DNA of 64,000 nucleotides from Mobula hypostoma (lineage: Eukaryota): assembly GCF_963921235.1 (NCBI RefSeq), contig NC_086100.1, positions 65,038,001 through 65,102,000 on the forward strand, in the 5' to 3' direction. Shown one piece after another: positions 19,166 to 62,627 of this stretch. Both the position numbers and the translations under genes were made by a program. The notes beneath the pieces were generated by a model, which saw only the letters and a list, made by a program, of their open reading frames with translations, did no database searches and was not told the DNA's origin. How positions within the stretch are numbered: the first letter of the stretch is position 1; every line of letters begins with the position of its first letter.

Positions 19166-19945
19166 TACAACTCAAACAACACACACAAAATGCTGGAGGA
19201 ACTCAGCAGGCCAGGCAGCAACAATGGAAAAAGAGAACCGGCACCAATATAGTCTTTGGCCACCTGAGGAAAAATGTATTTAGAAGATCAAGTCCTCAAA
19301 TTTGGCATAAAGGTCATGATGTGTCAAACTGCAGAGAACACTGCCATATTGTACACTTCTGAGACAAGGACTACCTACACAGCAGGCACCTCAAAACACT
19401 CAAAACCTTCAATTCATTGCAGGATAAACTAACTAACATTCCCATCTTAAAGCTTCTAATTACACTTAGTCAGTTCCAAAGGACAGGCTACATCACTAGA
19501 CTCAAATGTTCTTTACCAGGAGCAAGTACTCTGTTTGAAGGTAAAAATGCAAGTCCTGGAAATACATAGCTTCTGTGGAGAAAGAAACACTCAATTCGCC
19601 TTCCAGTATTTGAATATTTCCAGTTTAATGTTTCTAATTACAGGCACTGGCAAAGGTTTGCTTTCTTTTTATTCCAAGCTTGGTCACAGAAGTTACCAGA
19701 CAGCCTGTAGAAATGATTCTCAAGACTCTCTGTATAGGTCTCCTGCAACACCTCAAAATGGTGAAAAAGCATTTTGGATTGTATTGAGATCCCCAAGTCC
19801 ATTTGTCAGGAGCAGAGAGATATCCAGTGCAAACAATAAAAGAACTCCAACAACAGGAATTCTGCAGATGCTGGAAATTCAAGCAACACACATCAAAGTT
19901 GCTGGTGAACGCAGCAGGCCAAGCAGCATCTGTAGGAAGAGGTGC

Positions 19946-19981
19946 AGTCGACGTTTCAGGCCGAGACCCTTCGTCAGGACT
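19946..19981 (-). ncRNA. Minimal type I hammerhead ribozyme motif (intact core)
   Basis: Minus strand AGTC CTGACGA AGGGTCTCGGCCT GAAA CGTC GACT. Confidence 0.8.
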
Positions 19982-21121
19982 AACTGAAAGAAGAGTGAGT
20001 AAGGGATTTTAAAGTTGGAGGGGGAGGGGGAGGGGGAGATCCAAAATGATAGGAGAAGACAGGAGGGGGAGGGATAGAGCCAAGAGCTGGACAGGTGATA
20101 GGCAAAAGGGGACACGAGAGGATCATGGGACAGGAGGTCCGGGAAGAAAGACAAGGGGAGGGGACCCAGAGGATGGGCAAGAGGTATATTCAGAGGGACA
20201 GAGGGAGAAAAAGGAGAGTGAGAGAAAGAATGTGTGCATAAAAATAAGTAACAGATGGGGTATGAGGGGGAGGTGGGGCCTTAGCGGAAGTTAGAGAAGT
20301 CGATGTTCATGCCATCAGGTTGGAGGCTACCCAGACGGAATATAAAATGTGTGGCCACTGGGAGATCCTGCTTTCTCTGGCGGACAGAGCGTAGATGTTC
20401 AGCAAAGCGGTCTCCCAGTCTGCATCGGGTCTCGCCAATATATAAAAGGCCACATCGGGAGCACCGGACGCAGTATATCACCCCAGTCGACTCACAGGTG
20501 AAGTGTTGCCTCACCTGGAAGGACTGTTTGGGGCCCTGAATGGTGGTAAGGGAGGAAGTGTAAGGGCATGTGTAGCACTTGTTCCGCTTACACGGATAAG
20601 TGCCAGGAGGGAGATCGGTGGGAAGGGATGTGGCAGGGTGATATACTGCGTCCCAGTGGCCACACATTTTAATTCCACATCCCATTCCCATTCTGACATG
20701 TCTATCCACGGCCTCCTCTACTGTAAAGATGAAGCCACACTCAGGTTGGAGGAACAACACCTTATATTCCGTCTGGGTAGCCTCCAACCTGATGGCATGA
20801 ACATCGACTTCTCTTAGTTCCGCTAAGGCCCCACCTCCCCCTCATACCCCATCTGTTACTTATTTTTATGCACACATTCTTTCTCTCACTCTCCTTTTTC
20901 TCCCTCTGTCCCTCTGAATATACCTCTTGCCCATCCTCTGGGTCCCCCCCCCCCCCGTCTTTCTTCCCAGACCTCCCGTCCCATGATCCTCTCGTATCCC
21001 CTTTTGCCTATCAACTGTCCAGCTCTTGGCTCCATCCCTCCCCCTCCTGTCTTCTCCTATCATTTTGGATCTCCCCCTCCCCCTCCAACTTTCAAATCCC
21101 TTACTCACCCTTCCTTCAGTT

Positions 21122-21157
21122 AGTCCTGACGAAGGGTCTCGGCCTGAAACGTCAACT
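21122..21157 (+). ncRNA. Minimal type I hammerhead ribozyme motif
   Basis: AGTC CTGACGA AGGGTCTCGGCCT GAAA CGTC AACT; helix I G>A change. Confidence 0.72.
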
Positions 21158-22700
21158 GCACCTCTTCCTACAGATGCTGCTTGGCCTGCTGCGTTCACCA
21201 GCAACTTTGATGTGTGTTGCGTTAATAAAAGAACTCCACCACCTTCCAATCTATACACGTATCCACCTTCTTGCATTGTCAGCAGGTCGCACATAGGCCT
21301 GATCCTCCTCCTCAGAGTCCACTTAGACATAACGGATACAAGTGATACTTCACTTTGTATAAGTATAAAATAATGTGGAAGAAGTGAAACAGACAGTGTT
21401 TTTTTGCACCACATCACGGCGGTACTTTTGCATCATTTCTTTTACAGTATTTGGCTAGAACAAATGCATCTTCCACTGATTCAGTGCCTTTAATTTGCTA
21501 GTAATAGCCATGACATTTTGGCATTCTACAATTTAGGAATTACTAAAAAGAATCAGTTTCCTCTCTCTGTAAGGAGACTCACAGACCACACCAAAATCAT
21601 ACAAAAGAAAAAGGAAAATGTACAGGAGAAATATGACAAATTTCACAACACATGCTTGTGATAATACAATTTGATTCTGATATATATAAATTCCTGTAAC
21701 TTTTGAATACACAATTATTAACAAGTAAATACTTGAATTAATCATTTTTAGTACAAAATAGAGGAATATTCTGCAGAACAAAGGAATACAATCCAAAAGG
21801 GAGTAATTAAATGATTTTCTGAGTTTAAAAATTAATAGTCGGAAGGTTAAGTGATAAACTTCATTTGCTCATGGGTCTACACAGAATGAGTAAATTACAA
21901 AAAGATGATCAAGTCCTCTGAAAAATCAAATTTGCAACACAAGCTCAACAGTAATTTATTTTAATATATTTTTGTTAAACTTAGAATTTTTAGGTATAAT
22001 TGAAAATGTTTAGAAAGCTATCATTTACTTTCTTTCACAGATTACTTCAAAATAGTTACTCTTACTTAAGTGTGGCAAATGATTAAAGATGAGCTACTAA
22101 TATAATCCATTAAAAAATTACTGAACCTTTGGATTTTAATTTCTTGAGTCAAGAAGGTAACAGTGAGAGACTATGATACAGAGATAATCCTTTCTAAGGC
22201 ACATTAATACGGTATTACAAGTTATGTTTGCTTGGTAAAAAGGAAGATTTTTGTAATAATTAAACTTTCTGAGTTTACTGTCATTCAAACAATATCTTAA
22301 TCCATACTTTCTATTCATACATCTTTTTAAGGAGTAACTTTTATAATAATTCTACGTCTTTTGCAGTTTGTAGGTATTAATATTATTATATAATATTAAG
22401 CATTTTTCATCCCAATTTCAGTTGATGGCATTGTGGAAACACTAACCTAATTTTACATTGCAAAATTGTAAAGTGTAACCTTATCAAGGAATATCTCTTT
22501 AGCTAACGTTTGTAAAGTGCTGTACATCTAATACAATACACAGAAATTACACCAGTAGGACAACATTAGTACTTAGTGGTTAACATAGAATTGTTTGTAA
22601 ACCATTGACAATTACTGCAAATAAGAGCATAAAATATCTGCAAAATGATTCAATTAACTGGGATTTTTCTATAACTAAGTACTGAACAGCTCAAAACAAA

Positions 22701-22706
22701 TTTATT
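22701..22706 (-). terminator. Candidate polyadenylation signal for MOGAT1
   Basis: AATAAA on the minus strand ~53 nt after the stop codon; more distal signals are also possible. Confidence 0.35.
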
Positions 22707-22758
22707 CATTACACTGGGGCTAAATGTGCTTTTTATCTCAAGTGCTCAAATCGGAAAT

Positions 22759-22913
22759 TCAACTGAAAATCAGATGGTCTGTTTCAGGTATTCCATATTG
22801 AGCTTTGTGTTCTTCAAATAATTGATTTAGTGCCTCAATATATTTACTATGCAGCGCTTCAATCTCTTGGTTTGAAGGAATTTGATTCTGTTGCACAACA
22901 ATTGGCTTTCCCA
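22759..22913 (-). CDS. MOGAT1: MOGAT1 coding exon 6 (last)
   Basis: ttttacag|TG GGA AAG; VGKPIVVQQNQIPSNQEIEALHSKYIEALNQLFEEHKAQYGIPETDHLIFS*; 155 nt. Confidence 0.95.
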
Positions 22914-22959
22914 CTGTAAAATAAAACAAAACTATTAATCATAACTAATATTTCAGGTA

Positions 22960-23234
22960 TGTGGCACGTGGTTAAGGCGTTGGACTAGCGATCTGAAGGT
23001 CGTGAGTTCAAGCCCCAGCCGAGGCAGCATGTTGTGTCCTTGAGCAAGGCACTTAACCACACACTGCTCCAGTCCACCCAGCTGAAAATGGGTACCGGCA
23101 AAATGCTGGGGGTTAACCTCACGATAGACTGGCGTCCTATCCGGCGGGTGGGGGGGGGGGGGTACTCTCAGTCACTTCACGCCATGGAAACCGGCATAAG
23201 CACCAGCCTGATGAGTCTATAAGGCTCGGGACAG
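22960..23234 (+). mobile_element. tRNA-derived SINE with a CORE/Meta-like central domain
   Basis: A-box-like TGGCACGTGGTTAAGG and B-box-like GAGTTCAAGCCC; TGTGTCCTTGAGCAAGGCACTTAAC...AAAATGGG. 16-bp TSD ACTAATATTTCAGGTA at 22944-22959 and 23235-23250. Confidence 0.85.
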
Positions 23235-23487
23235 ACTAATATTTCAGGTACTGTGGTACTGTCACTTGCCTACTTCTTCCTAAGTCAGCAGTTCACAACA
23301 GTTCTCAAGAATAACATTAAAGGATTTTATCTTTAAAAATTTGTTTTCTTTTTAAAGTTAAATGGAAAGTAAAGGTCTGAGCAATTCTGTAATTTCTGAA
23401 TATTTGTATATTTAAACAAAAACACAGTTGAAGATTTGAAAATTCATAGTGGGTGTGTGTTGGCTAGCTTGTAGGAGGGGAAGGTGC

Positions 23488-23850
23488 AACAAACATATAA
23501 AATTATGGAACGGTTAGATAAAATAGAGGCAGGAAAGCTGTTTCCATTGGTAAGTGGGACTGGAACCTGGGGACATACCCTGAGGATTCATGGACACAAG
23601 GAGAAACTGCTTTTTTTGAGAGAGAAGCCTATGGAACTCTCTTCCCCGGGAAGCTACAGATGCTACATCATTGAATACATTTAGGACACAGTTAAATAGA
23701 TTTCCGCATAGCAAAGTAATTAAGGGTTATGGAGAAAAAGCAGGCAGATAGAGCTCAGTCTATGCCAAATCAACCATGATCTTATTGAATGGCAGAGCAG
23801 GCGCAATCAGCCAAATGGCTCATACCTTCTCCTACTTATTATGTTTCATA
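23488..23850 (+). mobile_element. CR1 LINE 3' fragment
   Basis: TYKIMERLDKIEAGKLFPL and CR1 3'UTR. Confidence 0.7.
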
Positions 23851-24844
23851 TCTTTAAAAGATTTCAATTTTTCTTCTCTTTTATGTGTATTCATTTTGGT
23901 GGTGCTAAAATGCATCAAAGAATCCTGATTGTGTAATTATGAACCTGGTAGATAAAGAAATTACTATGACGCTAGGGTTTCAAAAAGGGAAGGAGGAACA
24001 ATGAAAAGGGAAGGAGGAACAACGAAAAGGAAAGTAGGGAAAATTAATATCAAATTGGACAAAAAATTAAAATAAAGGATTTATAAATAAATAATTATTT
24101 ATAAATAAATTATAAATACATAACAAATTAATAACAATTTCAATTAGCACTGTTGAACATAGAGATGAGGATGCATTTCATAAAACTTACAGCAAATTGC
24201 AATTGGAAATGTATCCTCCACTGTCAATGGAAAAGTTACAAATCAAAAATGACAATTTCCATTGCACTTGTCAGTTGGAGAAAGAAAACTTTTATCTCAG
24301 ACCTCTACCGCCTTGTGGCTGTACCCACTCATGGGGAAGGCTTCAGCAATAAACCCCAAGGGAAAAATCTGGAGTTGGAGTCCCTAAGGCAGTCCTACAT
24401 TGAGTTCCATGCTGACTGGCAACTTGTGCAATGCTGCTGGTACCGAACTGTATCAGTCTCTGCTGTTCATTTGAGTTCATCAGATGCATGGAGAGGGGGA
24501 GCTTGCTACATGGACAACAGCTTGCTCAGGTTTGTGTATCAAGACAGCTAGGGTGCAACATCCCTGACCGACAGAGGCTTCACTCACTCATCATCAGTTG
24601 TAACTTGTGGCTTGTCATTTTGCCAACACACATTAAGTGAAAAATTGAACAGCAGAAACAAACACAAATAAAGTCAGAACATGCTGGGTACACCCAGAAC
24701 GTGAAGTGGCATTTGTGAAAAGATAAACAGGTTGATGTTTCAGGTCAACGTCCTTCATTGGATGCTGTGTCACCTGCTGATTGCTTCCAGAATCATCTGA
24801 TTTTATTTCTGATTTCCAACATCTATAGTTTGTAAAGTCAGGGT

Positions 24845-26971: not shown

Positions 26972-27113
26972 CTAAAGAGAGATGACAATTAAGGTGCATG
27001 CAAACATTCCTGATTTAGTCATTAAAGCTTCACCCAATACTAGAATACTAGAAACACACATCAAAGTTGCTGGTGAACGCAGCAGGCCAAGCAGCATCTG
27101 TAGGAAGAGGTGC

Positions 27114-27149
27114 AGTCGACGTTTCAGGCCGAGACCCTTCGTCAGGACT
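27114..27149 (-). ncRNA. Minimal type I hammerhead ribozyme motif (intact, sense to MOGAT1 pre-mRNA)
   Basis: Minus strand AGTC CTGACGA AGGGTCTCGGCCT GAAA CGTC GACT. Confidence 0.8.
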
Positions 27150-27210
27150 AACTGAAGGAAGAGTGAGTAAGGGATCCACTCACTATCCCTTACTCACTCT
27201 TCCTTCAGTT

Positions 27211-27246
27211 AGTCCTGATGAAGGGTCTTGGCCTGAAACGTCGACT
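27211..27246 (+). ncRNA. Minimal type I hammerhead ribozyme motif (intact)
   Basis: AGTC CTGATGA AGGGTCTTGGCCT GAAA CGTC GACT. Confidence 0.8.
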
Positions 27247-27789
27247 GCACCTCTTCCTACAGATGCTGCTTGGCCTGCTGCGTTCACCAGCAACTTTGAT
27301 GTGTGTTGCTTGAATTTCCAGCATCTGCAGAATTCCTGTTGTTTGCACTAGAATACTAGAATACACTAGCTAAATAAGACCTAACACAATAGAATGCACA
27401 AAGTTAAGGTGTAAAACTTGGTTTCCTTGATAGTATTAAACAGGAAAAATATTTTTTAAAGTGTTTATTATTTCTTGGATTCAGACCCTCAGAGTACTGC
27501 CTGCAACTTAATTTCAGAGATGGGCTGATTTCCTGAACTGTACTGTTTCCAAGGATGAGGGATTTCATCCATAAAGTTACACTAGAGAAGATGGCCTGTT
27601 CATCTTGTATCAAAGGAGAATCATGGTGTAAAATAGAGGAAAATTGTGCCCCAGTATTAGAAGGATCAAAATTAAACAACACAGATTTAAAATTTTGGAT
27701 TACAGATACTGAGAGGAGAGAGAAAACTATTCTATAAACACAAGATATTTTATTTTATTCAGAGTGGTTGGGATCTGGAAATTTTGATC

Positions 27790-28735
27790 ATGGAGTCACA
27801 GAACAGGGAATTGGCTCTTCAGCCCAAACAGTCCATCCCAAACAAGCTTCCAGGCTGAATTTGTTCTATTTGCATACATTTGGCCCATTACCTTTCCTAC
27901 CCACATACCCGTCCAGGTTCCTTTTAAATGTTGTAAACGTACCTGCCTCTGTCACTTTTTCTGGCAGTTCATTCCACCCTCTGTTTGAAAAATGTTGCTC
28001 CTCAGGATCCTATTAACTCTTTCGCTTCTCACCCTAAAATTATCACCTTTAGTCCTTGATTCCCCAACCTTGGCTTCAAGACTGCCTGCATTCACCCTAT
28101 CTATGCCCTTCATGATTTTATACACCCCTGTAAGATTACCCCTCATTTTCCTACACTCAGTAAATAAAGTTCCAACCTGCTCAACCTTTCTCCGTAACTC
28201 AATCACTCAAGTCCCGGCAGCTTCCAATCTCCTCTGCCTTCTTTCTAGCTAAATAGCATGTTTCCTATAGCAGGGTGATGAAACATATTCCAAATGCCTT
28301 ACGAGAATAGGTTGAGTGAACTCGGCCTTTTCTCCTTGGAGCGACGGAGGATGAGAAGTGACCTGACGGAGGTGTATAAGATGATGAGAGGCATTGATTG
28401 TGTGGATAGTCAGAGGGCCGAAATGGCTGCCACAAGAGGACACAGGTTTAAGGTGCTGGGGAGTAGGTACAGAGGAGATATCAGGGGCAAGTTTTTTTAC
28501 TCCGAGAGTGGTGAGTGTGTGGAATGGGCTGCCGGCATTGGTGGCAGAGGCAGATACGATAGGGTCTTTTAAGAGACTTTTGGATAGGTACATGGAGCTT
28601 AGAAAAATAGAGGGCTATAGGTAAGCCTAGTCATTTCTAAGGTAGGGAAATGTCCGGCACAACTTTGCGAGCCGAAGGGCCTGTATTGTGCTGTAGGTTT
28701 TCTATGTTTCTATGTAAATGCAACCTCCCCAATAG
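27790..28735. mobile_element. Old minus-strand CR1 3' fragment with a younger plus-strand CR1 3' end (~28296-28715) nested in it
   Basis: RGNLTGVYKIMKGIDRV (-); YENRLSELGLFSLERRRMRSDLTEVYKMMRG (+) with a (TTCTATGT)n tail. Confidence 0.8.
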
Positions 28736-29409
28736 TTTGTAGGTGTACTCACTTATTTGAATGCCTGAATCTGTTAGTTCTGGATATCACCCTAGAGTAA
28801 AGTGGCAGGGCCCAATTCCAGCTATTTTAGAGCTTAGGCAAAATTTTGGTAAGTGAAACAGACTGAAGTACTTGAAAAGTAAACAAGTGGAACAAGGCAG
28901 GAAAGGAAAAGTGATCTTATCAAAGTTGGTAAGAAGAAACAAATATAGAATATCTTGCAAACTGTGAACATAAAACTCAGTAACCTAGAACTTCTTTGGT
29001 GCTTTAAAAAGAAGGCAACAGGAAGTTATATTTCTTACACAATATGTCAAATTAATTTTGCAAGTCCTGGAACAGCTTGCACATTCTTTAGGAAATTGAG
29101 TAAGAAGCACATATTTTAAACATTATCTCTACTCATAGTGACAGTTCTCAAATTGACATTTGGTAGAAGGCATGGTAAACATTCAGAAACTAATGAACGA
29201 TCATGTCACTGGAAGTAGACCTCAAGGGCAACGGTTGATGTATTTATCCATTGTCTTTCCCAACACCAATCCAAGAGAAGACATTGGGAATTCAAGGTCT
29301 CACACTGGCATTCTATTTTTGGATAAATATCTTTTGTAGGGCATCAAACCACTGAACTTGAAATGCAAAATGCTAATACAAAGGAAGAGCAAACAACGTG
29401 AATAGGAAT

Positions 29410-31448
29410 GTGAAGAGCAAAGTGAATAGGAATAAGGAACCTTGGTTCTCAAGGGATATTGCAACTCTGATAAAGAAGAAGAGGGAGTTGTATGACATGT
29501 ATAGGAAGCAGGGAGTAAATAAGGTGCTTGAGGAGTATAAGAAGTGCAAGAAAATACTTAAGAAAGAAATCAGGAGTGCTAAAAGACATGAGGTTGCCTT
29601 GGCAGTCAAAGTGGAGGATAATCCAAAGAGCTTTTACAGGTATATTAAGAGCAAAAGGATTGTAAGGGATAAAATTGGTCCTCTTGAAGATCAGAGTGGT
29701 TGCCTATGTGCGGAACCAAAGGAAATGGGGGAGATCTTAAATAGGTTTTTTGCGTCTGTATTTACTAAGGAAACTGGCATGAAGTCTATGGAATTAGGGG
29801 AAACAAGTAGTGAGATCATGGAAACTGTACAGATCGAAAAGGAGGAGGTCCTTGCTGTCTTGAGGAAAATTAAAGTGGATAAATCCCCGGGACCTGACAG
29901 GGTGTTCCCTCGGACCTTGGAGGAGACTGGTGTTGAAATTGCAGGGGCCCTGGCAGAAATATTTAAAATGTCGCTGTCTACAGGTGAGGTGCCAGAGGAT
30001 TGGAGAGTGGCTCATGTTGTTCCGTTGTTCAAAAAAGGATCGAAAAGTAATCCGGGAAATTATAGGCCGGTAAGTTTAATGTCGGTAGTAGGTAAGTTAT
30101 TGGAGGAAGTACTAAGAGACAGAATCTACAAGCATTTGGATAGACAGGAACTTATCAGGGAGAGTCAACATGGCTTTGTGCGTGGCAGGTCATGTTTGAC
30201 CAATCTACTGGAGTTTTTCGAGGAGGTTACCAGGAAAGTGGATGAAGGGAAGGCAGTGGATATTGTCCACATGGACTTCAGTAAGGCCTTTGACAAGGTC
30301 CCCCATGGGAGGTTAGTTAGGAAAATTCAGTTGCTAGGTATACATTGAGAGGTGGTAAACTGGATTAGACATTGGCTCGATGGAAGAAGCCAAAGAGTGG
30401 TAGTAGAGAATTGCTTCTCCGAGTGGAGGCCTGTGACTAGTGGTGTGCCACAGGGATCAGTGCTGGGTCCATTGTTATTTGTCATCTATATCAATGATCT
30501 GGATGATAATGTGGTAAATTGGATCAGCAAATTTGCTGATGATACAAAGATTTGCGGTGTAGTAGACAGCGAGGAAGGTTTTTAGAGCCTGCAGAGGGAC
30601 CTGGACCAGCTGGAAAAATGGGCTGAAAAATGGCAGATGGAGTTTAATGCAGACAAGTGTGAGGTATTGCACGTTGGAAGGACAAACCAAGGTAGAACAT
30701 ACAGGGTTAATGGTAAGGCACTGAGGAGTGCAGTGGAACAGAGGGATCTGGGAATACAGATACAAAATTCCCTAAAAGTGGCAGCACAGGTAGATAGGGT
30801 CGTAAAGGGAGCTTTTGGTACATTAGCCTTTATTAATCAAAGTATTGAGTATAAGAGCTGGAATGTTATGATGAGGTTGTATAAGGCATTGGTGAGGCCG
30901 AATCTGGAGTATTGTGTTCAGTTTTGGTCACCAAATTACAGGAAGGATATAAATAAGGTTGAAAGAGTGCAGAGAAGGTTTACAAGGTTGTTGCCGGGAC
31001 TTGAGAAAGTCAGTTACAGAGAAAGTTTGAATAGGTTAGGATTTTATTCCCTGGAGCGTAGAAGAATGAGGGGAGATTTGATAGAGGTATATAAAATTAT
31101 GATGGGTATAGATAGAGTGAATGCAAGCAGGCTTTTCCCACTGAGGCATGGGGAGAAAAAAACCAGAGGACATGGGTTAAGGGTGAGGGGGGACAAGTTT
31201 AAAGGGAACATTAGGGAACATTCTTCACACAGAGAGTGCTGGGAGTATGGAATGAGCTGCCAGACGAGGTGGTAAATGCGGGTTCTTTTTTAACATTTAA
31301 GAATAAATTGGACAGATACATGGATGGGAGGTGTATGGAGGGATATGGTCTGTGTGCAGGTCAGTGGGACTAGGCAGAAAATGGTTCAGCACAGCCAAGA
31401 AGGGCCAAAAGGCCTGTTTCTGTGCTGTAGTTTCTATGGTTCTATGGT
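29410..31448 (+). mobile_element. Young 5'-truncated CR1 LINE, ORF2 RT region, in MOGAT1 intron 4
   Basis: [44 protein letters not shown]. Only two in-frame stops (30346, 30583) plus a late frameshift. (TTCTATGG)n tail. Confidence 0.95.
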
Positions 31449-31625: not shown

Positions 31626-31790
31626 AAACACAAGAGATTCTGCAGACGCTGGAAATCCCGAGCAACACACACAAAATGCTGATGGAAATCAGCAGGTCAA
31701 GCAGCATCTATGGAATTGAATAACCAGTCAACATCTTGGGCGAAGACCCTTCATCAGTACTGGAAAAGAAAGGGAAAGAAACCAGAATAA
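31626..31790 (-). mobile_element. Older Penelope terminal-repeat fragment with decayed hammerhead
   Basis: AAACACAAGAGATTCTGCAGACGCTGGAAAT...GACCCTTCATCAG. Confidence 0.75.
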
Positions 31791-46290: not shown

Positions 46291-46421
46291 TACAGTACTT
46301 CAATTATTATAAAGTACTTTGGGACACTGGCAAAGGTAATATGCAAAGGGAAAGTTATGTCTAAAAAATTAAGTATTATCTAAATATTTACTGCCAATAT
46401 TTAAAGTCAGCCGGTCAGCCT

Positions 46422-46690: not shown

Positions 46691-46893
46691 CCTACACCAT
46701 TCCTTAAATCTTATATTTTCATTATTGTGTTCAAATTTATCCTTCTTTCTTCCTATCATTTAATGCTCAAAAACTCTCCTACTTTATATACCTCATTCCA
46801 CTTACCTTACCAGGTCAGGCTTCTTCTGTGAAATTCCTTTTAAGAACTTCTGTCTTTTATTCCTTTCTTCCTAACGAGATGTTTCCTGAATCT

Positions 46894-47815
46894 AAAAACG
46901 TAAACACGAGGAATATCTTTCCCTCCCCCCCTCTGCTTTCCACAGGGATCATTCCCTACGTGACACCCTTGTCCATTCGTCCCCCCCATCCCTCCCCACT
47001 GATCTCCCTCCTGGCACTTATCCTTGTAAGCGGAACAAGTGCTACACATGCCCTTACACTTCCTCCCTTACCACCATTCAGGGCCCCAGACAGTCCTTCC
47101 TGGGGAGGCGACACTTCACCTGTGAGTCGGCTGGGGTGATATACTGCGTCCGGTGCTCCCGATGTGGCCTACTATATATTGGCGAGACCCGACGCAGACC
47201 GGGAGATCGTTTTGCTGAACACCTACGCTCTGTCCGCCAGAGAAAGCAGGATCTCCCAGTGGCCACACATTTTAATTCCACATCCCATTCCCATTCTGTT
47301 ATGTCTATCCACAGCCTCCTCTACTGTAAAGATGAAGCCACACTCAGGTTGGAGGAACAACACCTTATGTTCTGTCTGAGTAGCCTCCAACCTGATGGCA
47401 TGAACATTGACTTCTCTAACTTCCGCTAATGTCCCACCTCCCCCTCGTACCCCATCCGTTATTTATTTATATACACACATTCTTTCTCTCTCTCTCCTTT
47501 TTCTCTCTCTGTCCCTCTGGCTATAGCCCTTGCCCATCCTCTGGGTTTTTTTCTCCCTCCCCCTTTTTCTCCCTGGGCCTCCTGTCCCATGATCCTTTCA
47601 TATCCCTTTTGCCAATCACCTGTCCAGCTCTTGGCTCCATCCCTCCCCCTCCTGTCTTCTCCTATCATTTTGGATCTCCCCCTCCCACTTTCAAATCTCT
47701 TACTAGCTCATCCTTCAGTTAGTCCTGATGAAGGGTCTCAGCCCGAAACATCGATTGTACCTCTTCCCAGAGATGCTGCCTGGCCTGCTGCGTTCACTAG
47801 CAACTTTGATGTGTG
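46894..47815 (+). mobile_element. Penelope 3' fragment (linker + GIY-YIG + terminal repeat) with a tiny inverted terminus, in MOGAT1 intron 1
   Basis: PCKRNKCYTC, IYCVRCSRCGLLYIGET. TSD TGTTTC(C/T)TGAATCT at 46880-46893 and 47816-47829. Confidence 0.92.
47721..47756 (+). ncRNA. Hammerhead motif, partly decayed
   Basis: AGTC CTGATGA AGGGTCTCAGCCC GAAA CATC GATT. Confidence 0.6.
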
Positions 47816-48450
47816 TGTTTCTTGAATCTGGCTATTTTGCTTTGAGTGTTCCTTCAAATATATTCTCTTGAACACTGGTAATTGTACAGCTGAGACATTT
47901 TTTTCCTATTTAAAGTTCTTATTTTTTAAAGAATGACCATGTCGTAAAAAAATTGACTATTCCTTGTCCAAAAAAATTAGAAAATTATATCTGACTCTGA
48001 GCACACCAATATTCGGCCGTTGTCTATGCTATGCCTCGCCTCTTTGAAAATTGTTATCTTCTATCATCAATACAGTATCTGTATTTAAAATCTTACTCCG
48101 GTTGTTTCTTGAGATCAGCAGAAAATAATTTGGAATTGAATTTTAAACTGAACACTCGCCACGCGTATTTTGGACAAACTTTAAGTCAGCACTCATTAGG
48201 TTAAGTATTTTGTATATTAGTGGCATCACATAACGAAGGCACGTGCTATTCAGTTGCTGCTATCGGGACCCTACGGAAATAGCCACACCGTGACTGTAAC
48301 TTTACACTATAAAAGTTTTCTGAACAGGAGACACTTAGAGAAATGCCCAGACGGCAATGAATTAATGTGTATATCCAACCACGTTGAATTTTTTTAACAA
48401 AAGGATACAATATTTTCATAAATTACCCCAACATTATAATGAAAAATTAC

Positions 48451-55179: not shown

Positions 55180-55795
55180 ACAAGAAAGTTGAAAAGATGA
55201 AATATGAATGTAAACTAGCCAATAATATAAAAAAGGATACCAAAAGATTTTTCAGATATATAAAGAGTGAAAGAGAGGTAAGAGTAGATATCGGACCACT
55301 GGAAAATTATGCTCTAAAGGTAGTAATGGGAGACAAGGAATTAGCAGATGAACTGAATAATAATTTTGCATCTGATTTCACTGTGGAAGACACGAGCAGT
55401 ATGCTGGAAATTTGTGAGTGTCAGGGAGCAGAAGTGAGTGCAGTTGCTATTACTACGGAGAAGGTGCTTGGGAAGCTGAAAGATCTGAAGGTAGATAATT
55501 CACCTGGACCAGATGGACTATACATGTGAGTTCAGAAGGAAGTAGCTGAAGAGATTGTGGAGGTATTAGTAATAATCTTTCAAGAATCAACAGATTCTGG
55601 TGTAGCTCTGGAGAACTGGAAAATTATGAATATCACCCTACTCCTCAAGAAGAAAGGGAGGCAGAAGAAAGGAAATTATAGACCTGATAGCCTGACCTCA
55701 GTGTTGAATTTGATTGTTGAGGATGAGATTTCAGGGTACTTGAAGGCATATGATAAAGTAGACCAAAGTCAGTATGGTTTCTTTAAGGAGAAATA
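55180..55795 (+). mobile_element. CR1 ORF2 fragment
   Basis: KRFFRYIKS...IGPLE...NSPGPDG, GNYRP.SLTSV. Confidence 0.85.
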
Positions 55796-55796
55796 G

Positions 55797-57010
55797 ACCG
55801 TAAGACATAAGAGCACTATTACATCATTCAGCATTTTTGAGTCTGTTTCACCATTCAATCATGGCTGATCCTGGATCCCACTCATGGCGTGTAACTCACC
55901 TTCTGACTCCCCAAAGCCTGTCCACCATCTATAAGGCTCAGGTCAGGAGTGTAATGGAATACTCGCCACTTGCCTGGATGAGTGCATCTCCATCAACACT
56001 CTAGAAGCTTGACACCATCCAGTACAAGGCAGCCCACTTGATTGGTACCCCTTCCACAAGCATCCAATCCCTCCACTATTGATGAAAAGTTGCAGCAGTG
56101 TGTACTATCCACGATGCACTGCAACAACACACCAAAGTTCCTATGGTAGCACCTTCCGGAACCATGACACCACCATCTAGAAAGATGAGAACAGCAGGTT
56201 CCTGGGAACACCACCACTTGGAAATCCCCCTCCAAGTCACTCACCATCCTGACTTGGAAATATATCGCCATTCCTTCATTGTTGCTGGGTCAAAACCATG
56301 GAATTCTCTCCCTACCAGCACTGTGGGTGTACCTACAGCTCAGGGACTGCAGCGGTTCAAGAAGGCAGCTCATCAGCGCCCTCTCAAGGGCAACTAGGGA
56401 TGGTCAACAAATGTTGCCTTAGCAGGCGACACCCACATCCGATAAGTGAATAAAAAACTCAACCCCATACTTCTGCTTTCTCGCCAAATCTTTTGATACC
56501 CTGACTGATCAGGAAACTATTAACTTCTGCCTTAAATATACCCACAGACTCACTCTCCACTGCAGTCTGTGGCAGAACATTCCATGGATTCACTACTCTC
56601 TGGCTAAAAAAATTCCACCTGGCCTCTGTTCTAAAAGGTCTCACCTCAATTTTGAGGCTACGCCCTCTAGTTCCAGATACCCCCACCATAGCTGCAAAAC
56701 ACTCCACATATCTTAACCCCTTCATTCCTAGAACCATCCTCATGAACCTCCTTTGGACTCTCTCTAATTACAACATATCCTTTCTGAGTTATGGGGCCCA
56801 AAACTGTTGACAGTACTCCGTGTGGCCTGAATAGTGTCTTATTATCTCCTTGCTTTTATATTCTATTCCCCTTGAAATAAATGTCAACATTGCATCTGCC
56901 TTCTTTACCATACACTCAACCTGTAAATTAACCTTCTGGGAGACTTGCACGAGAACTCCTAAATCCCTCTATACCCATGATGTTTGAACCTTCTCCCCAT
57001 TTAGATAATA
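55797..57010 (-). mobile_element. CR1 3' fragment interrupted by a plus-strand L2/CR1-superclade LINE 3' end (55885-56456)
   Basis: FFSQRVVN.WN.LP (-). The insert has IYKAQVRSVMEYS and KPWNSLP..FKKAAH, an A-tail, and a 5-bp TSD ACTCA. Confidence 0.8.
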
Positions 57011-57757
57011 GTCCGTAATATATTTTATGACAGAAGGTGTCACAAACAGTTTGGTCTAAGGCATACTATCTGTAATCTGCACACAGATCTAATATTGACT
57101 CTCAATAGACTTTATGACATCCTTCATCTAAACATGTACAATAGAGCTGAATCCCAGAGGTGAGTGGTGGTTACTTACACTTGACATTCAAGTTGCATTT
57201 GAAGTGTATCATCAAACTGAAGACAATGGGCATAAAAAAATCCAGCAGCTATAATCATACATAGTATAATGAAAGAAGATTATAGTTATCGGAGGTCCAT
57301 CATTTCAATCCTTAGAACACCATTGCTAGAGTTTTTAAGAGCAACCTAATCATTTGCAGTTGCTTCATCAATAATCTTCCTCATATGGGATGTTTTTGTT
57401 TGATGATTGCACAATGAGCGATTCCATTATCAATATTGCAGCAAATACAAGAAGATCTATGCAACATTCTCATATGACCTAACACATGGCAAATAACATA
57501 CATACCACAGATGTGCCAGGCAATGACCATCTCCAAAAGGAAAGTTTAATCATTTTCGTTTGCTATTCTGTGCAATTACAATAGTTAATCCAACAGTTTG
57601 AAGATACTAGGAAACATGGTTGAACAGAAACTTAAATGGACCAGCAGCATAGATTGTTATAAATGACAATTGTTGACAGAATTTCAGATGGTAATGAGGA
57701 AGCATACTGAAGCAAGATAGATGTCCTTGGTGTCAACACCTCTGAGGATCTATCCTG

Positions 57758-58118
57758 GGGAGGTTTATAAGATTATGAGAGTCATTGATAGAGTAGACAG
57801 CCAGTATAATTTTTTTAGGATTAAAATATCAAATACAGAGGGCATGCATTTAAGGTGAGGGGGTAGGCTGAAAAGAGATATGCAGAGTTTATTTTTACAC
57901 AGGGAATGGTGGCTGCCTGGAGTGCGCTTCCTGAGGTGGTGGTGGAGGTAAATATGACAGAAGCATTCAAGAGGCTCTTAGATAGGATCATGAATGTAGA
58001 TGAAATGGAAGGATATGGAGAAGGGATTAATTTAGTTGGACACTTGATTGCTAATTTATTTGGTCCCGCACAACATTAGGGCCTGTTTCTGTGCTGTACT
58101 GTTTACGTTCTAAGTTCT
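57758..58118 (+). mobile_element. CR1 3' fragment
   Basis: EVYKIMRVIDRV and 3'UTR GGGCCTGTTTCTGTGCTGTA. Confidence 0.7.
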
Positions 58119-58549
58119 ATAATGTTAAACCCACTCCACCCAATCCTACTTGTAGAATAATTTTTTCATTACCGAGAATCAAATGAAACTTCGGTGCATC
58201 ATCACTAAGTGTGTCCTTCCTTAATGAAAGGGGACCAAACCATTTGCAAGGTGTGGTTTCACCAAAATCTTGAAGAGTCATAGTCAGATATTCTTACATT
58301 TATACTTGATATTCCATGTAATGAAGGAGAATATTTCATTTGCCTTCCAGTTTACTCTAAATTTTCAAATGTCTTGCAGTCTGTGAAGTTCACCCTCTTT
58401 TTCAAGTCATAGTTTATTCATAAAATGTGGAACTATAGATTAGGGAACATTGATTGTCTTCATATCATTACACTGATATTTAATGTTGACATTCTATCCA
58501 TGCCATAATTTTTTTCCATCCCAAGTATGTTGTCAGCAATAAGCCTAAT

Positions 58550-59280
58550 GTTTGTTACACAGGCAGGCCCAGCTGCTCAGTGTCCAGTGGTGGGAGGACC
58601 CATCCTCCAAAGAGCCTTTGCACCAGCTGCAGCCAGCTTCAGCACATTAGGTTGATTTCAAGTGCTCCAGCCTGCAGCTGTCATTTGCCATCAGCTCACC
58701 AGCACATTTCACGAGAACCAAGGGCTGCCTTTCACTGAGGTGATGATCTCCCAGCAGCAGTTGATATTTGTCTCAGTTTGTACTGTAGAGCTCTCTTATG
58801 CAAATACTTAAGTGAATCTCGTGGAGGACCATAGCATTTCTTTCTGGATTTTCTTTGCAAGTGTGTCATAAGCAGGTGGATGACAGTCTCATTCACACAG
58901 CCGCCACCTCGAGGAGAGTGCATAGAGGGACATAGACATTGGGTGTTCATGAAGAATCTGACAGATGGCTCATCTCACCACTGCCCATGGAAAGTCTTGA
59001 AGCTTTGTTGAAAGTTTGTTGAAATGATGACACTTACGCAAAATGCCTAAGAGTTTGCTTGGGAAACCACCTCACAGATTCCACCATCTCCTTCTTCCAT
59101 AGGACTAGAAGGCTTTTTGCACAGACCACAGGCTGATTGACTTGTTTTCAAAAGGTGTTTATTTGCAGAAATTTATGAGAGACAGGGGATATGGCAAAAT
59201 CCAACAGAATAGAAGGTTATATGGGTAGAAGACCAGGCCACCCCCTTGCAACACTGGGAACATGTGGGACTTCAGTGTGG
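58550..59280 (-). mobile_element. Degenerate Tx1/L1-like ORF2 C-terminal fragment
   Basis: PRGGGCVNETVIHLL zinc-knuckle remnant. Confidence 0.45.
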
Positions 59281-59309
59281 AGTGATATGCGTAGTTAGAT
59301 GGATGCACA

Positions 59310-59598
59310 GAGGATGTTTCCCATAGTGGCAGAGGGCACAGTCTCAGAATAGAGGCATATCCATTTAGAAGAGAGATGAGGAGGAATTTCTTTGGCCAGA
59401 TGGTAGTTCATCGCCACAGATAGCCATGGAGGCCAAGTCATTAGGTATATTTAAAGCACAGGTTGTTCTTGATTAGTCAGGGTGTCGAAACGTTAGGGGA
59501 GAAGGCATCTGTTGAGAGGGAATAAATCAGCCACAATTGAATGATGGAGCAGATTTGATGGAATAATGGCCTCATTCTGCTCCTACAGTCTGTCTTAT
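59310..59598 (+). mobile_element. CR1 3' fragment
   Basis: EMRRNFF remnant and 3'UTR. Confidence 0.65.
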
Positions 59599-60153
59599 GG
59601 TATTTGAGTACCAGGGTTGGCAGGATGAGGGTTAAATTGGGTATACCTTACACTTTCTATGGAATTTGCATATCCACATGCTCCCTGGAACTCATTCTGA
59701 ATGATTGCTGTAACACAGATGTGGTGTATGGACATAACCTGTGCCATATACCATGACACAGAGCACAATATGATCAAGTTCTTTGCTGCAATTAGGAGGG
59801 AGTTGGCATCTTTCCCTTGATTTATTTAAAACAGTCAGTTTTTGGTACACGCTCTGGCTCCTCCAACCCGGATCCTCAGCACCGTCAGATCATTGGATCT
59901 CGAGGTGCAGAGAACAAAGGATCAGTTTGACCAGTTGTCAAATAACACGTCAAATAATGTCGTGGTTTTATGCTGCATTTAGCTCTGGCCCCAAACTTGT
60001 CACAGATACCCGCGCATTAACATTGCATCTGAGCAGAAGGAATCATGTACACTATAAACAACAGGAATTCTGCAGATGCTGGAAATTCAAGCAACACACA
60101 TAAAAGTTGCTGGTGAACGCAGCAGGCCAGGCAGCATCTCTAGGAAGGGGTGC

Positions 60154-60189
60154 AGTCGACGTTTCAGGCCGAGACCCTTCATCAGGACT
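60154..60189 (-). ncRNA. Minimal type I hammerhead ribozyme motif (intact)
   Basis: Minus strand AGTC CTGATGA AGGGTCTCGGCCT GAAA CGTC GACT. Confidence 0.8.
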
Positions 60190-61176
60190 AACTGAAGAAA
60201 GAGTGAGTAAGGGATTTGAAAGTTGGAGGGGGAGGGGGAGATCCAAAATGATAGGAGAAGACAGGAGGGGGAGGGATGGAGCCAAGAGCTGGACAGGTGA
60301 TAGGCAAAAGGGATACGAGAGGATCATGGGACAGGAGGTCCGGGAAGAAAGACAAGGGGGAGGGGACCCAGAGGATGGGCAAGGGGTATATTCAGAGGGA
60401 CAGAGGGAGAAAAAGGAGAGTGAGAGAAAGAATGTGTGTATAAAAATAAGTAACAGATGGGGTACGAGGGGGAGGTGGGGCATTAGCGGAAGTTAGAGAA
60501 GTCGATGTTCATGCCATCAGGTTGGAGGCTACCCAGACGGAATATAAGGTGTTGTTCCTCCAACCTGAGTGTGGCTTCATCTTTACAGTAGAGGCCGTGG
60601 ATAGACATGTCAGAATGGGAATGGGATGTGGAATTAAAATGTGTGGCCACTGGGAGATCCTGCTTTCTCTGGCGGACAGAGTGTAGGTGTTCAGCAAAGT
60701 GGTCTCCCAGTCTGCGTCGGGTCTCGCCAATATATAGAAGGCCACATTGGGAGCACCGGACACAGTATTTAACGAGACCAGTGCTCTAATTCTTGAGCTA
60801 CGGGTTGGAGGAACAACACCTTATATTCCATCTGGGTAGCCTCCAACCTGGTGGCATGAACATTGACTTCTCCAACTTCCACTAATGCCCCACCTCTCCC
60901 TCGTACCCCATTCGTTATTTATTTTTATACACACATTCTTTCTCTCACTCTCCTTTTTCTCCCTCAGTCCCTCTGACTATACCTCTTGCCCATTCTCTGG
61001 GTTCCCCCCTCCGTCTTTCTCCCCGGACCTCCTGTCCCATGATCCTCTCGTATCCCTTTTGCCAATCACCTGTCCAGCTCTTGGCTCCATCCCTCCCCCT
61101 CCTGTCTTCTCCTATCATTTCGGATCTCCCCCTCTCCCTCCCACTTTCAAATCTCTTACTAATTCATCCTTCAGTT

Positions 61177-61212
61177 AGTCCTGACGAAGGTTCTCGGCCA
61201 GAAACGTCGACT
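61177..61212 (+). ncRNA. Hammerhead motif with altered helix II
   Basis: AGTC CTGACGA AGGTTCTCGGCCA GAAA CGTC GACT. Confidence 0.68.
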
Positions 61213-61289
61213 GTACCTCTTCCTAGAGATGCTGCCTGGCCTGCTGTGTTCACCAGCAACTTTGATGTGTGTTGCTTGTACACTATAAA

Positions 61290-61728
61290 TGATGTTTGCA
61301 ACTCTGTCGAATACGAATATGTACGGACATGCCACGTCGTATTTGTAGTTCGCACGCATGCAGCTTTTCGCTTTTTAAAAGCCACATACTGCCAGGTGGT
61401 AACTCCAGCCCTCGCCTCGCCCACGTTTTCTCTCGGGATCCGCCCAGAAATTACACCAGGCACCCGCGGTCCTGGTACATTACTAGTTCTTAATGTTACC
61501 CGAGTAGGTAACTACATTACTCGCCGGAAGGTTAAACCAAACGAATGTATATTTTAACTATTTCAATAAGATTTAATAAACAAACAACGTATATTTCTAA
61601 AACATTATTTTCAGAAAAAAAATCAAAATAGCAGGAGACCGCAGGAACGGGGAAGACAACTATCGGGGGGGGGGTAAGGTCAGCCTTGGTGCGCATGCGC
61701 TCTGTGTTGATTTCCTCCGGTTCTGACC
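61290..61728 (+). promoter_or_regulatory. FARSB: FARSB CpG-rich promoter with NRF1 site
   Basis: TGCGCATGCGC at 61690-61700, ETS-like CCGGAAG at ~61524, CpG-rich. Confidence 0.75.
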
Positions 61729-61786
61729 ATGCCGACCGTCAGTGTGAAGCGGGATTTGTTATTTCGGGCTTTAGGGCAAACGTACA
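61729..61786 (+). CDS. FARSB: Phenylalanyl-tRNA synthetase beta subunit, coding exon 1 (gene continues beyond window)
   Basis: ACC ATG; MPTVSVKRDLLFRALGQTY, nearly identical to the vertebrate FARSB N-terminus; donor CA|GTGAGT at 61787. Confidence 0.96.
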
Positions 61787-62423
61787 GTGAGTTTATTGAT
61801 TGATTCACTCATTCATTGTAGACGTGTCGGTGGCTTGAGGGTCTCGGTGAACGACGATGGGGGGGTGAAAGAAAGATCACACACGGGGCGGGGACAGATA
61901 CGGACTGACGGAGGGGATGGTGAGGAAGCTGAAGCGGCAGGGTGGACTGTACAATGTAAAATGTGCAACATCAGACAGGCTGTGTGGAGCCTCCGCTAGA
62001 ACCACAGAGCAATACAGCGTGGATGCAGGCCCTTCTAGGGTCCTGTATTCATTCATTTGAACACCCTTCCGTCCCGCGATTGCATCACGCAGCCGGCGTT
62101 TGCATTCCTGTGGTTGCAGCGTGCAATGGGCGTTCTCCTCCTTTCCGATAAATATATTTTATTCAACAAACAGCGTCAAATAGTGCAGATACGGGCCATT
62201 CGGCCCACTACACCTATGCTGTCCCTTTTGTCTATTTACGAGGAATGGCGTATATTTCGGGTGGAGACCCTGCAACAGCCCTGATGTTGACAATCGCTTT
62301 GCCTCCCTAGATACTGCATGACCCACTGAGTTCCTCCAGCAGTTTGCCTTTGCTGCAGATTGCAGCACCTGTGGGTTCTTGTGTATCCATATCATTCTGT
62401 CTTGCCCATTGAAGTATACAGTA

Positions 62424-62627
62424 AAACACATAAAAATTGCTGGTGAACGCAGCAGGGCAGGCAGCATCTCTAGGAAGAGGTACAGTCGACGTTTCGGGCC
62501 GAAACCCTTCGTCAGGCCCGAAACGTCGACTGTACCTCTTCCTAGAGATGCTGTCTGGCCTGCTGCGTTCACCAGCAACTTTTATGTGTTTTGCTTGAAA
62601 TTCCGGCATCTGCAGATTTCCTCGTGT
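62424..62627. mobile_element. Very short fold-back Penelope-derived insertion in FARSB intron 1
   Basis: ~77-bp stem (62424-62500 with 62515-62591), 14-nt loop. 15-bp TSD TTGAAGTATACAGTA at 62409-62423 and 62628-62642. Confidence 0.92.

What the first reader, a model, noticed from the sequence alone, without database searches (positions are those of the whole stretch)
19850..62627. Family of TSD-flanked, fold-back Penelope derivatives with a hammerhead ribozyme in each arm
Seen: four insertions (19850-21223, 27054-27346, 60059-61276, 62424-62627) consist of two inverted copies of the same Penelope 3' end. Each is bounded by a perfect 13-15 bp TSD, so each palindrome is a single insertion event. 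Stems range from ~77 to ~475 bp, every central junction is different, and none has coding capacity. Known: Penelope-like elements carry minimal hammerheads in their pseudo-LTRs and can have inverted pseudo-LTRs. Inference: here the fold-back form is the dominant product (4 in 64 kb). It is made afresh at each insertion rather than copied as a MITE, seeding the genome with ribozyme-bearing dsRNA hairpins.
Basis: partly seen in the sequence, partly recalled or inferred. Interest (0 to 1): 0.8.

Follow-up and report, generated by a model that had tools for sequence, protein, structure and literature searches.

The report
Head-to-head Penelope-like retrotransposon insertions
Four short palindromic inserts are real, independent insertions of a Neptune-type Penelope-like retrotransposon, each made of two truncated copies joined head to head, an architecture already described for this class of elements, although one insert shows that its two halves were copied from two different RNAs.

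Summary
All four inserts sit at the stated coordinates. Each is two inverted 5'-truncated copies of one Penelope-like element (PLE) 3' end, with both 3' ends facing outward. Each is bounded by a perfect 13-15 bp target-site duplication, and every central junction differs.

One detail fails: insert 4 has no complete hammerhead. Rfam does not detect the hammerheads. They fit only the published minimal-hammerhead descriptor (9 hits against 0.2 expected).

The architecture is already published for PLEs: TSD-flanked inverted copies, head-to-head orientation, a 30-40 bp "tail" on one end only, and hammerheads in the terminal repeat. The purified PLE protein also nicks and extends both DNA strands from two adjacent start sites. 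In every insert here one arm starts at the long (tail) site and the other at the short site.

My additions:
- The two arms of insert 3 belong to different subfamilies (AU test p=0.005).
- The arms of insert 1 carry different internal deletions.

Both points favour two separately templated cDNAs over snap-back self-copying.

Inserts 3 and 4 are also present in a related species, so no empty site was found. The family is extremely abundant. First readers of this scan noted the same thing about 40 times elsewhere in this genome. The dsRNA-hairpin role is untested.

The parts
19835..19849 (.). Insert 1, left TSD copy (AATAAAAGAACTCCA)
   Evidence: perfect 15-nt direct repeat with 21224-21238.
19850..20635 (-). 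Insert 1, left arm. Antisense on the + strand, with the long end: the tail is about 19850-19885. It reaches into the endonuclease coding region and carries a 92-nt internal deletion at about 20350.
20636..21223 (+). Insert 1, right arm. Sense, with the short end (stops at ...GTGTGTTGCgtt). It starts with an 18-nt patch and then skips 105 nt.
21224..21238 (.). Insert 1, right TSD copy
19950..19977 (-). Minimal hammerhead motif in the left arm of insert 1
   Evidence: pattern hit; core CUGANGA...GAAAC GUC intact.
21126..21153 (+). Minimal hammerhead motif in the right arm of insert 1. Position 1.1 has decayed from G to A.
27039..27053 (.). Insert 2, left TSD copy (ACTAGAATACTAGAA)
27054..27175 (-). 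Insert 2, left arm, short end. Hammerhead motif at 27118-27145.
27176..27184 (.). Insert 2, 9-nt filler at the junction. Both arms are truncated at the same nucleotide.
27185..27346 (+). Insert 2, right arm, long end (tail 27307-27346). Hammerhead motif at 27215-27242.
27347..27361 (.). Insert 2, right TSD copy
60046..60058 (.). Insert 3, left TSD copy (TGTACACTATAAA)
   Evidence: Also crossed by a contig from species B.
60059..60768 (-). Insert 3, left arm, long end (tail about 60059-60092). Its subfamily is close to the insert 1 arms. Hammerhead motif at 60158-60185.
60769..60800 (.). Insert 3, filler of about 32 nt that is not PLE sequence
   Evidence: No tRNA or Rfam call.
60801..61276 (+). 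Insert 3, right arm, short end. Its subfamily is shared with the copy at 46894-47816. Hammerhead motif at 61181-61208 with a broken helix II.
61277..61289 (.). Insert 3, right TSD copy
   Evidence: A species B contig spans 61253-62339.
62409..62423 (.). Insert 4, left TSD copy (TTGAAGTATACAGTA)
62424..62514 (-). Insert 4, left arm, short end. Hammerhead core at 62488-62515, without the native helix I 5' strand.
62515..62627 (+). Insert 4, right arm, long end (tail 62593-62627). It begins inside helix II, so it has no hammerhead. It joins the left arm at a 2-nt GG/CC overlap.
62628..62642 (.). Insert 4, right TSD copy
   Evidence: A species B contig spans 62602-62889.
46894..47816 (+). Fifth insertion of the same family. 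A long sense arm with the short end and a hammerhead motif at 47725-47752. At its left end, about 25 nt (46894-46918) match the inverted tail of the insert 4 subtype. The TSD is 46881-46893 and 47817-47829, matching at 12 of 13 positions.

Best explanation
Each of the four inserts is the direct product of one integration event of a Neptune-type Penelope-like retrotransposon. The element's GIY-YIG endonuclease made staggered nicks 13-15 bp apart. Each of the two exposed 3'-OH ends primed reverse transcription of an element RNA. One cDNA started at the distal start site and so carries the 32-40 nt tail. The other started at the proximal start site in the GU-rich ...GAUGUGUGUUGC stretch.

Both cDNAs ran inward for variable distances (about 80 to 780 nt) and sometimes jumped templates. 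Their 3' ends were then joined by microhomology or filler, and each was used to complete the other strand. The outcome is a head-to-head pair of 5'-truncated copies with both 3' ends outward, one TSD, and a unique centre.

Shown here: the structure, the TSDs, the long/short ends, the differing junctions, different templates for the two arms of insert 3, and presence in a second species.

Inferred from published biochemistry: priming on both strands, and the two start sites.

The minimal hammerhead is simply part of the copied 3' region. All eight arms read through its cleavage site, so the templates were uncleaved RNAs. The inserts are non-coding, old (they predate the split of two species), and have no demonstrated function.
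For: Element identity:
- GIY-YIG domain in Pfam, E=1e-4, above the cut-off.
[quoted passage not shown] These are the Neptune/Nematis signature according to PMC8557442.

Ends:
- In all four inserts one end carries the tail and the other stops 32-40 nt short.
- Both kinds of end abut the TSD directly, with 0-3 nt of overlap.
- The fifth family copy shows the same pattern through a vestigial tail arm.

Independent templating of the arms:
- Insert 3's left arm groups with the insert 1 arms (support 99/97). Forcing its two arms together is rejected (AU p=0.0046).
- In insert 3, 14 of the 34 differences between arms have both states shared with other copies. In insert 1 the figure is 2 of 17.
- Insert 1's arms carry different internal deletions of 92 and 105 nt.

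Junctions carry filler or microhomology.

Literature:
- The purified PLE protein cleaves and extends both strands, and the tail equals the sequence between two RT start sites (PMC11167929).
- An inverted 5'-truncated copy, and a tail at one end only, are typical of PLEs (PMC8557442; PMC3846280).

Contigs from species B cross three flank-to-arm boundaries.
Against: - No empty site was found. The single-event reading therefore rests on the TSDs alone.
- Only one insert gives direct evidence for two templates. Gene conversion of one arm by another genomic copy cannot be excluded.
- In vitro, both start sites were used on both strands without preference. The strict one-long, one-short pairing (5 of 5 here, chance about 0.03 if ends were chosen independently) is not explained by the published data.
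- Insert 2's arms are truncated at the same nucleotide, and insert 4's junction fits a snap-back as well.
- The central junctions were not verified by independent reads.
- The hammerhead call rests on a descriptor match, not on Rfam or an assay.
Confidence: 0.7

Rival explanations
1. Snap-back self-priming. A single cDNA primed on one strand folds back on itself near its 3' end and copies itself. The second arm is then a copy of the first. This is the self-priming idea raised for PLE palindromes in PMC3846280.
For: - Insert 4's junction is what a hairpin primed by a 2-nt GG/CC pairing with a 14-nt loop would give.
- Insert 2's arms stop at the same nucleotide.
- Insert 1's arms are sisters in the tree (93/93).
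- The published discussion favours self-priming.
Against: - Insert 3's arms come from different subfamilies.
- Insert 1's arms have different internal deletions.
- A copy of the first arm should end where that arm ends. Yet every insert has one long and one short end, and each abuts the TSD.
- Both-strand extension has been shown in vitro.
Confidence: 0.15
2. Fold-back units that amplify as such. On this reading they are a hairpin-shaped non-autonomous element, MITE- or SINE-like, mobilised in trans by the PLE machinery.
For: - In one search, contig joints that link a left arm ending at 60173-60189 to a right arm starting at 61167-61218 have depths of 100-270, against 7-8 for single-copy flanks. 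Some hammerhead-centred junction forms may therefore be multi-copy.
- Unchecked first-reader notes report recurrent 170-210 bp forms elsewhere in the genome.
Against: - In this window no two inserts share a junction, arm lengths or subfamily.
- A transcript of a fold-back would carry the 3' recognition region in sense at one end only.
- Contig depth is not a copy count.
Confidence: 0.08
3. Two separate insertions that happen to abut, later rearrangement, or an assembly artefact.
For: - PLEs tend to insert into or near their own sequence.
- Palindromes are a known assembly problem for PLEs.
- Insert 3's right arm has a longer terminal branch than its left arm.
Against: - Perfect 13-15 bp repeats bracket the whole pair, and no second TSD brackets either arm.
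- The arms differ by 4-9% and by indels, unlike a collapsed artefact.
- Contigs from a second species reproduce both outward-facing ends of insert 3 and one end of insert 4.
Confidence: 0.04

Closest known systems
Canonical PLE insertion architecture: pseudo-LTRs with an adjacent inverted 5'-truncated copy and a one-sided 30-40 bp tail (Arkhipova et al. 2013, PMC3846280; Craig et al. 2021, PMC8557442)
   Same: Flanked by a TSD. Head-to-head inverted copies with 3' ends outward. Tail on only one of the two inverted ends. Microhomology or palindromes at the inverted junction. Hammerhead in the repeated terminal region.
   Different: Here there is no full-length or tandem unit between the inverted copies. 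Both arms are short 5'-truncated 3' ends, so the whole insert is a 0.2-1.4 kb fold-back. The TSDs are longer (13-15 bp, against 8-10 bp in the rotifer cases).
PAc (Poseidon of Anolis carolinensis) in vitro integration (Frangieh et al. 2024, PMC11167929)
   Same: Nicking and extension of both strands. Internal initiation at two adjacent sites separated by the tail. Hammerhead cleavage not needed, and uncleaved RNA used as template.
   Different: PAc belongs to the Penelope/Poseidon clade and has no CX2-5CxxC linker. In vitro neither strand preferred a start site, whereas here every insert pairs one long end with one short end. In PAc the start sites lie in the first ~120 nt of the ORF. Whether that holds here is unknown, because no full-length copy is in the window.
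Minimal hammerheads of PLEs (Cervera and de la Pena 2014, PMC4209133)
   Same: Type I layout with no helix III loop. Palindromic ACGU at positions 15.1-16.1. An extra base between positions 9 and 10.1. A 4-bp helix II, with G10.1-C11.1 retained in the least decayed copies. A 5-bp helix I.
   Different: Not detected by Rfam models. Activity was not tested. In a fold-back transcript the partner copy is antisense, so the dimeric active form cannot assemble from a single transcript.
L1 twin priming inversions
   Same: A second priming event on the other DNA strand during one integration gives an inverted segment inside one TSD.
   Different: In L1 the second primer anneals internally on the same RNA, so only one end is an RNA 3' end. 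Here both ends are 3' ends using defined start sites, and the two arms can come from different RNAs.
Foldback/MITE DNA transposons and animal non-LTR retrozymes
   Same: Short non-coding repeats with long inverted arms (Foldback/MITE) or with hammerheads (retrozymes).
   Different: Unlike Foldback/MITE elements, these have no fixed unit, no conserved internal sequence and no fixed TSD length. Unlike retrozymes, the arms are inverted rather than tandem direct repeats, and there is no evidence of circular RNA.

Membership tests
Penelope-like elements, EN+ (Neptune/Nematis type) | [quoted passage not shown] | tested here: met
   Pfam GIY-YIG E=1e-4, 23.0 bits against a cut-off of 22.6. The translations read VIYCVRCSRCGLLYIGET. 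The criterion is from PMC8557442.
Penelope-like elements, EN+ (Neptune/Nematis type) | CX2-5CxxC zinc-finger-like linker upstream of GIY-YIG (absent from Penelope/Poseidon) | tested here: met
   CKRNKCYTC lies upstream of the GIY motif in three arms. Neptune and Nematis were not separated, because no RT phylogeny was made.
Penelope-like elements, EN+ (Neptune/Nematis type) | PLE/telomerase-like reverse transcriptase | not testable with these tools
   All copies of this family in the window are truncated 3' of the RT. A related family copy at 9991-11892 has RT motifs and a weak RVT_1 hit (E=2.6e-4, below the cut-off).
Penelope-like elements, EN+ (Neptune/Nematis type) | [quoted passage not shown] | tested here: met
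   A 32-40 nt extension is present on exactly one arm in each of the four inserts.
Penelope-like elements, EN+ (Neptune/Nematis type) | Inverted 5'-truncated copy inside the same TSD | tested here: met
Minimal hammerhead ribozyme of PLEs | Conserved core (C3-A9, G12-A14, A15.1, U16.1-H17) with helices I and II and a palindromic 15.2-16.2 | tested here: met
   Nine pattern hits against 0.2 expected. Helices were read by hand against the descriptor in PMC4209133. Six of the eight fold-back arms carry a whole motif.
Minimal hammerhead ribozyme of PLEs | Recognition by curated hammerhead covariance models | tested here: not met
   No Rfam hammerhead hit at gathering score on the whole window, nor at E<=10 on 27020-27380. 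This is expected for motifs without helix III.
Minimal hammerhead ribozyme of PLEs | Self-cleavage | not testable with these tools
Monomer folds are no better than shuffled sequence.
MITE / Foldback-type unit amplification | Copies share the same internal junction and arm lengths | tested here: not met
   The window holds four different junctions and arm-length pairs. The genome-wide picture is open (joints).
Non-LTR retrozymes | Tandem direct repeats, each with a sense hammerhead | tested here: not met
   The arms are inverted, and no tandem copies were found.

The most novel reading that the evidence does not exclude
Every integration by this PLE may be an obligately paired reaction. On this reading a dimeric RNP loaded with two separate RNAs primes on both nicked strands. 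One protomer is committed to the distal start site (tail) and the other to the proximal one. Mixed-subfamily fold-backs such as insert 3 would then be natural recombinant records of that dimer. The strict pairing of one long and one short end would reveal an asymmetry not seen in vitro.
Probability: 0.35. Interest if true: 0.55.

Novelty: new member of a known kind. Interest (0 to 1): 0.3.

Why it matters
PLE integration is the least understood retrotransposition mechanism in animals. These short fold-backs are clean natural end-products that record both priming sites, both truncation points and the joining step of single events.

If a census confirms mixed-subfamily arms and the strict long/short pairing, that would give genomic support to two-strand, two-template priming. 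It would also argue against the older self-priming idea.

In practice, a family this abundant, inserting as palindromes, complicates assembly and repeat annotation. It also places long inverted repeats inside introns. Beyond that, the finding is an ordinary, already described feature of PLE biology.

Tried and rejected
- Rfam scans for hammerheads gave nothing at gathering score over the whole window, or at E<=10 around insert 2. The only hits were spurious miRNA-hairpin matches to the palindrome.
- Monomer folds of the hammerhead and of the 3' tail region are no better than shuffles.
- The search for empty sites failed. The related species B carries inserts 3 and 4. Runs from more distant organisms held only the repeat itself.
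- RNA-type runs contain family sequence but cannot show transcription of these loci.
- By eye, the 32-nt filler of insert 3 looks like a tRNA D-arm and anticodon arm. ARAGORN and Rfam do not call it and it has no other copy in the window, so this is left as an impression.
- I first read the left end of the copy at 46894 as ORF sense sequence, by weak protein similarity to the family at 9991-11892. I then found a 14-of-15 match to the insert 4 type of inverted tail. I now favour a vestigial arm, without proof.
- The 6-nt coincidence gcaaac next to the left TSD of insert 1 was considered as an alternative boundary and rejected in favour of the perfect 15-nt TSD.
- The idea that hammerhead cleavage sets the truncation points was rejected. 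All eight arms extend past the cleavage site.
- The ORFs at 29398-31275 (RVT_1) are not PLE and do not belong to this finding.


Full report
**Observation**

Repeat searches confirm all four inserts at the stated coordinates, and I read the sequence directly. Each insert is a pair of inverted arms bracketed by a perfect direct repeat:

| Insert | Coordinates | TSD | TSD length |
|---|---|---|---|
| 1 | 19850-21223 | AATAAAAGAACTCCA | 15 bp |
| 2 | 27054-27346 | ACTAGAATACTAGAA | 15 bp |
| 3 | 60059-61276 | TGTACACTATAAA | 13 bp |
| 4 | 62424-62627 | TTGAAGTATACAGTA | 15 bp |

A 13-mer match at the boundaries has a chance of about 2e-6 even when the boundaries are allowed to slide. Paired stems run from about 81 nt (insert 4) to about 490 nt (insert 1), with 91-97% complementarity.

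**What the arms are**

Translated in sense, the inner parts of the longer arms encode the C-terminus of a GIY-YIG endonuclease.
- Pfam GIY-YIG scores E=1e-4, above the cut-off, on the best-preserved copy.
- According to Craig et al. 2021 (PMC8557442), the CCHH motif is general to PLE endonucleases, and the extra linker marks the Neptune and Nematis clades, not Penelope/Poseidon.

After the stop codon comes a 3' region of about 430 nt. Both outer ends of every insert are 3' ends of the element, so the arms are 5'-truncated copies joined head to head.

BLAST of an arm against the window finds three more PLE insertions:
- A fifth copy of the same family at 46894-47816.
- A related family at 9991-11892. 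It is single-armed, with the TSD ACACAACTAA.
- A short fragment of a third family at 31626-31770.

**Hammerheads**

Rfam finds no hammerhead at gathering score on the whole window, nor at E<=10 on the insert 2 region.

A pattern for the conserved core with a GAAAY-NUH end gives nine hits, against 0.2 expected. Read against the minimal-hammerhead descriptor of Cervera and de la Pena 2014 (PMC4209133), the motif has these features:
- An intact core.
- A 5-bp helix I.
- An extra base between positions 9 and 10.1.
- A 4-bp helix II, closed by G10.1-C11.1 in the least decayed copies. Elsewhere this pair has turned to G-U through CpG decay.
- No helix III loop.
- A palindromic ACGU.

Six of the eight fold-back arms carry a whole motif. 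Insert 3's right arm has a broken helix II. Insert 4's right arm begins inside helix II. Insert 4's left arm has lost the native helix I strand to the junction. 'A hammerhead in each arm' therefore holds for three of the four inserts.

All eight arms extend beyond the cleavage site, so the templates were uncleaved. This agrees with the in vitro finding that cleavage is not needed (PMC11167929).

**Long and short ends**

Alignment of the arms and the oriented boundaries show a regular asymmetry.
- One arm of each insert ends with a 32-40 nt extension (...CTTGAATTTCCAGCATCTGCAGAATTCCTGTTGT).
- The other arm stops in ...GATGTGTGTTGC.
- Both kinds of end abut the TSD, with 0-3 nt of overlap.
- The tail is on the left in inserts 1 and 3 and on the right in inserts 2 and 4.

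The copy at 46894-47816 ends short on the right. Next to its left TSD are about 25 nt that match the inverted tail of the insert 4 subtype at 14 of 15 positions.

This extension is the published PLE 'tail':
- It is 30-40 bp and often present at only one end of the insertion (PMC8557442).
- It is optionally present on one of the inverted pLTRs (PMC3846280).
- It equals the sequence between two adjacent internal start sites of reverse transcription (PMC11167929).

**Junctions**

Every centre is different.
- Insert 1: the left arm reaches far into the endonuclease region and has a 92-nt internal deletion. The right arm begins with an 18-nt patch and then skips 105 nt. Both skips sit at 2-3 nt repeats.
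- Insert 2: both arms stop at the same nucleotide and are separated by 9 nt.
- Insert 3: about 32 nt of non-PLE filler separate the arms.
- Insert 4: the arms overlap by GG/CC, and one arm is 14 nt longer.

**Are the arms copies of each other?**

I compared the five long arms over 455 shared columns.

| Pair of arms | Differences between the pair | Private to one arm | Both states shared with other copies |
|---|---|---|---|
| Insert 1, left and right | 17 | 15 | 2 |
| Insert 3, left and right | 34 | 20 | 14 |

- Ten of the 14 shared-state sites in insert 3 group the left arm with the insert 1 arms and the right arm with the copy at 46894. Several are transversions.
- The left arm of insert 3 has 4 private changes and the right arm has 16.
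- In a maximum-likelihood tree, the insert 1 arms are sisters (93/93).
- Insert 3's left arm joins the insert 1 arms (99/97).
- Forcing insert 3's two arms together costs 19 log-likelihood units (AU p=0.0046).

No second TSD brackets either arm of insert 3. The simplest reading is one integration event that used two different RNAs. The arm-specific deletions in insert 1 point the same way. Gene conversion cannot be excluded.

**Mechanism**

The purified PLE protein of Anolis nicks and extends both strands of its target, unlike R2 or L1, and it is predicted to be a dimer.

Staggered nicks with priming on both 3'-OH ends give exactly the geometry seen here: antisense cDNA on the top strand at the left, antisense cDNA on the bottom strand at the right, 3' ends outward, and one TSD.

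Joining the two cDNA ends by microhomology or filler explains the unique centres.

The older self-priming proposal fits the junctions of inserts 2 and 4. It does not fit the mixed arms of insert 3, the different deletions in insert 1, or the long/short ends.

The strict pairing of one long and one short end is not explained by the in vitro data, where neither strand preferred a site. With five cases the chance is about 0.03 under independent choice, which is suggestive only.

**Other genomes and abundance**

Contigs of a run from a related species (flanks 2-3% different) cross from flank into arm at three places:
- The left end of insert 3 (59700-60080).
- The right end of insert 3 and on to 62339.
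- The right end of insert 4 (62602-62889).

Both inserts therefore predate the split of the two species, no empty site is available, and the outward-facing ends are not an assembly artefact.

Summed word depth over the arms is 1-6 million, against about 8 in unique sequence. The family is enormously abundant, though this figure is not a copy count.

The joint table lists many other fold-backs with different breakpoints (over 1,400 joints). A group joins the arms right at or just 5' of the hammerhead with depths of 100-270. This may mean a hot spot, or some amplified units. It is the main caveat to 'made afresh each time'.

First readers of this scan left about 40 similar, unchecked notes elsewhere in this genome.

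**RNA hairpin idea**

If transcribed, insert 2 would fold into a nearly perfect hairpin of about -263 kcal/mol. Such a transcript holds only one sense hammerhead, buried in the duplex and without the second sense copy that these minimal motifs need. No run showed transcription of these loci. The proposed role is therefore untested and, for the ribozyme part, unlikely.

**Verdict**

The modest new point is natural evidence that the two arms of one insertion can come from two RNAs, together with a strict long/short pairing of ends. Both need a genome-wide census.

Noticed in passing
window 46881-47829: A fifth insertion of the same family. It looks single-armed, but about 25 nt next to its left TSD match the inverted tail of the insert 4 subtype (14 of 15). 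The TSD matches at 12 of 13 positions (GTTTCCTGAATCT and GTTTCTTGAATCT).
   Followed up: partly
window 9991-11892: A 5'-truncated copy of a related PLE family, with RT and endonuclease coding remnants, a hammerhead motif at 11801-11828, a short end, a 10-12 bp TSD (ACACAACTAA) and no inverted arm.
   Followed up: partly
window 31626-31770: A short minus-strand fragment of a third PLE family that keeps the tail but has a decayed hammerhead. The tail is about 80% conserved between families, which fits a recognition role.
   Followed up: no
window 60769-60800: The filler between the arms of insert 3 is not PLE sequence. Read in reverse complement it resembles, by eye, the D-arm and anticodon stem of a tRNA or tRNA-derived SINE. 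ARAGORN and Rfam do not call it.
   Followed up: partly
window 29398-31275, with 28078-28219 and 30992-31134: ORFs with a clear RVT_1 domain (E=2e-15) that do not belong to the PLE family. An 80% inverted repeat pair lies nearby. This is probably a LINE-type element.
   Followed up: no
window 5353-5943 (minus strand): A 196-aa ORF that matches Pfam DUF4939 (E=5e-7, just above the cut-off). In my recollection, not checked here, this domain occurs in retrotransposon gag-like proteins.
   Followed up: no
window 60173-60189 joined to 61167-61218 (contigs from elsewhere in the genome): Many genomic fold-backs of this family have their centre at or just 5' of the hammerhead. Some junction contigs have depths of 100-270, against 7-8 for single-copy sequence. 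This may be a template-switch hot spot or amplified mini fold-backs.
   Followed up: no
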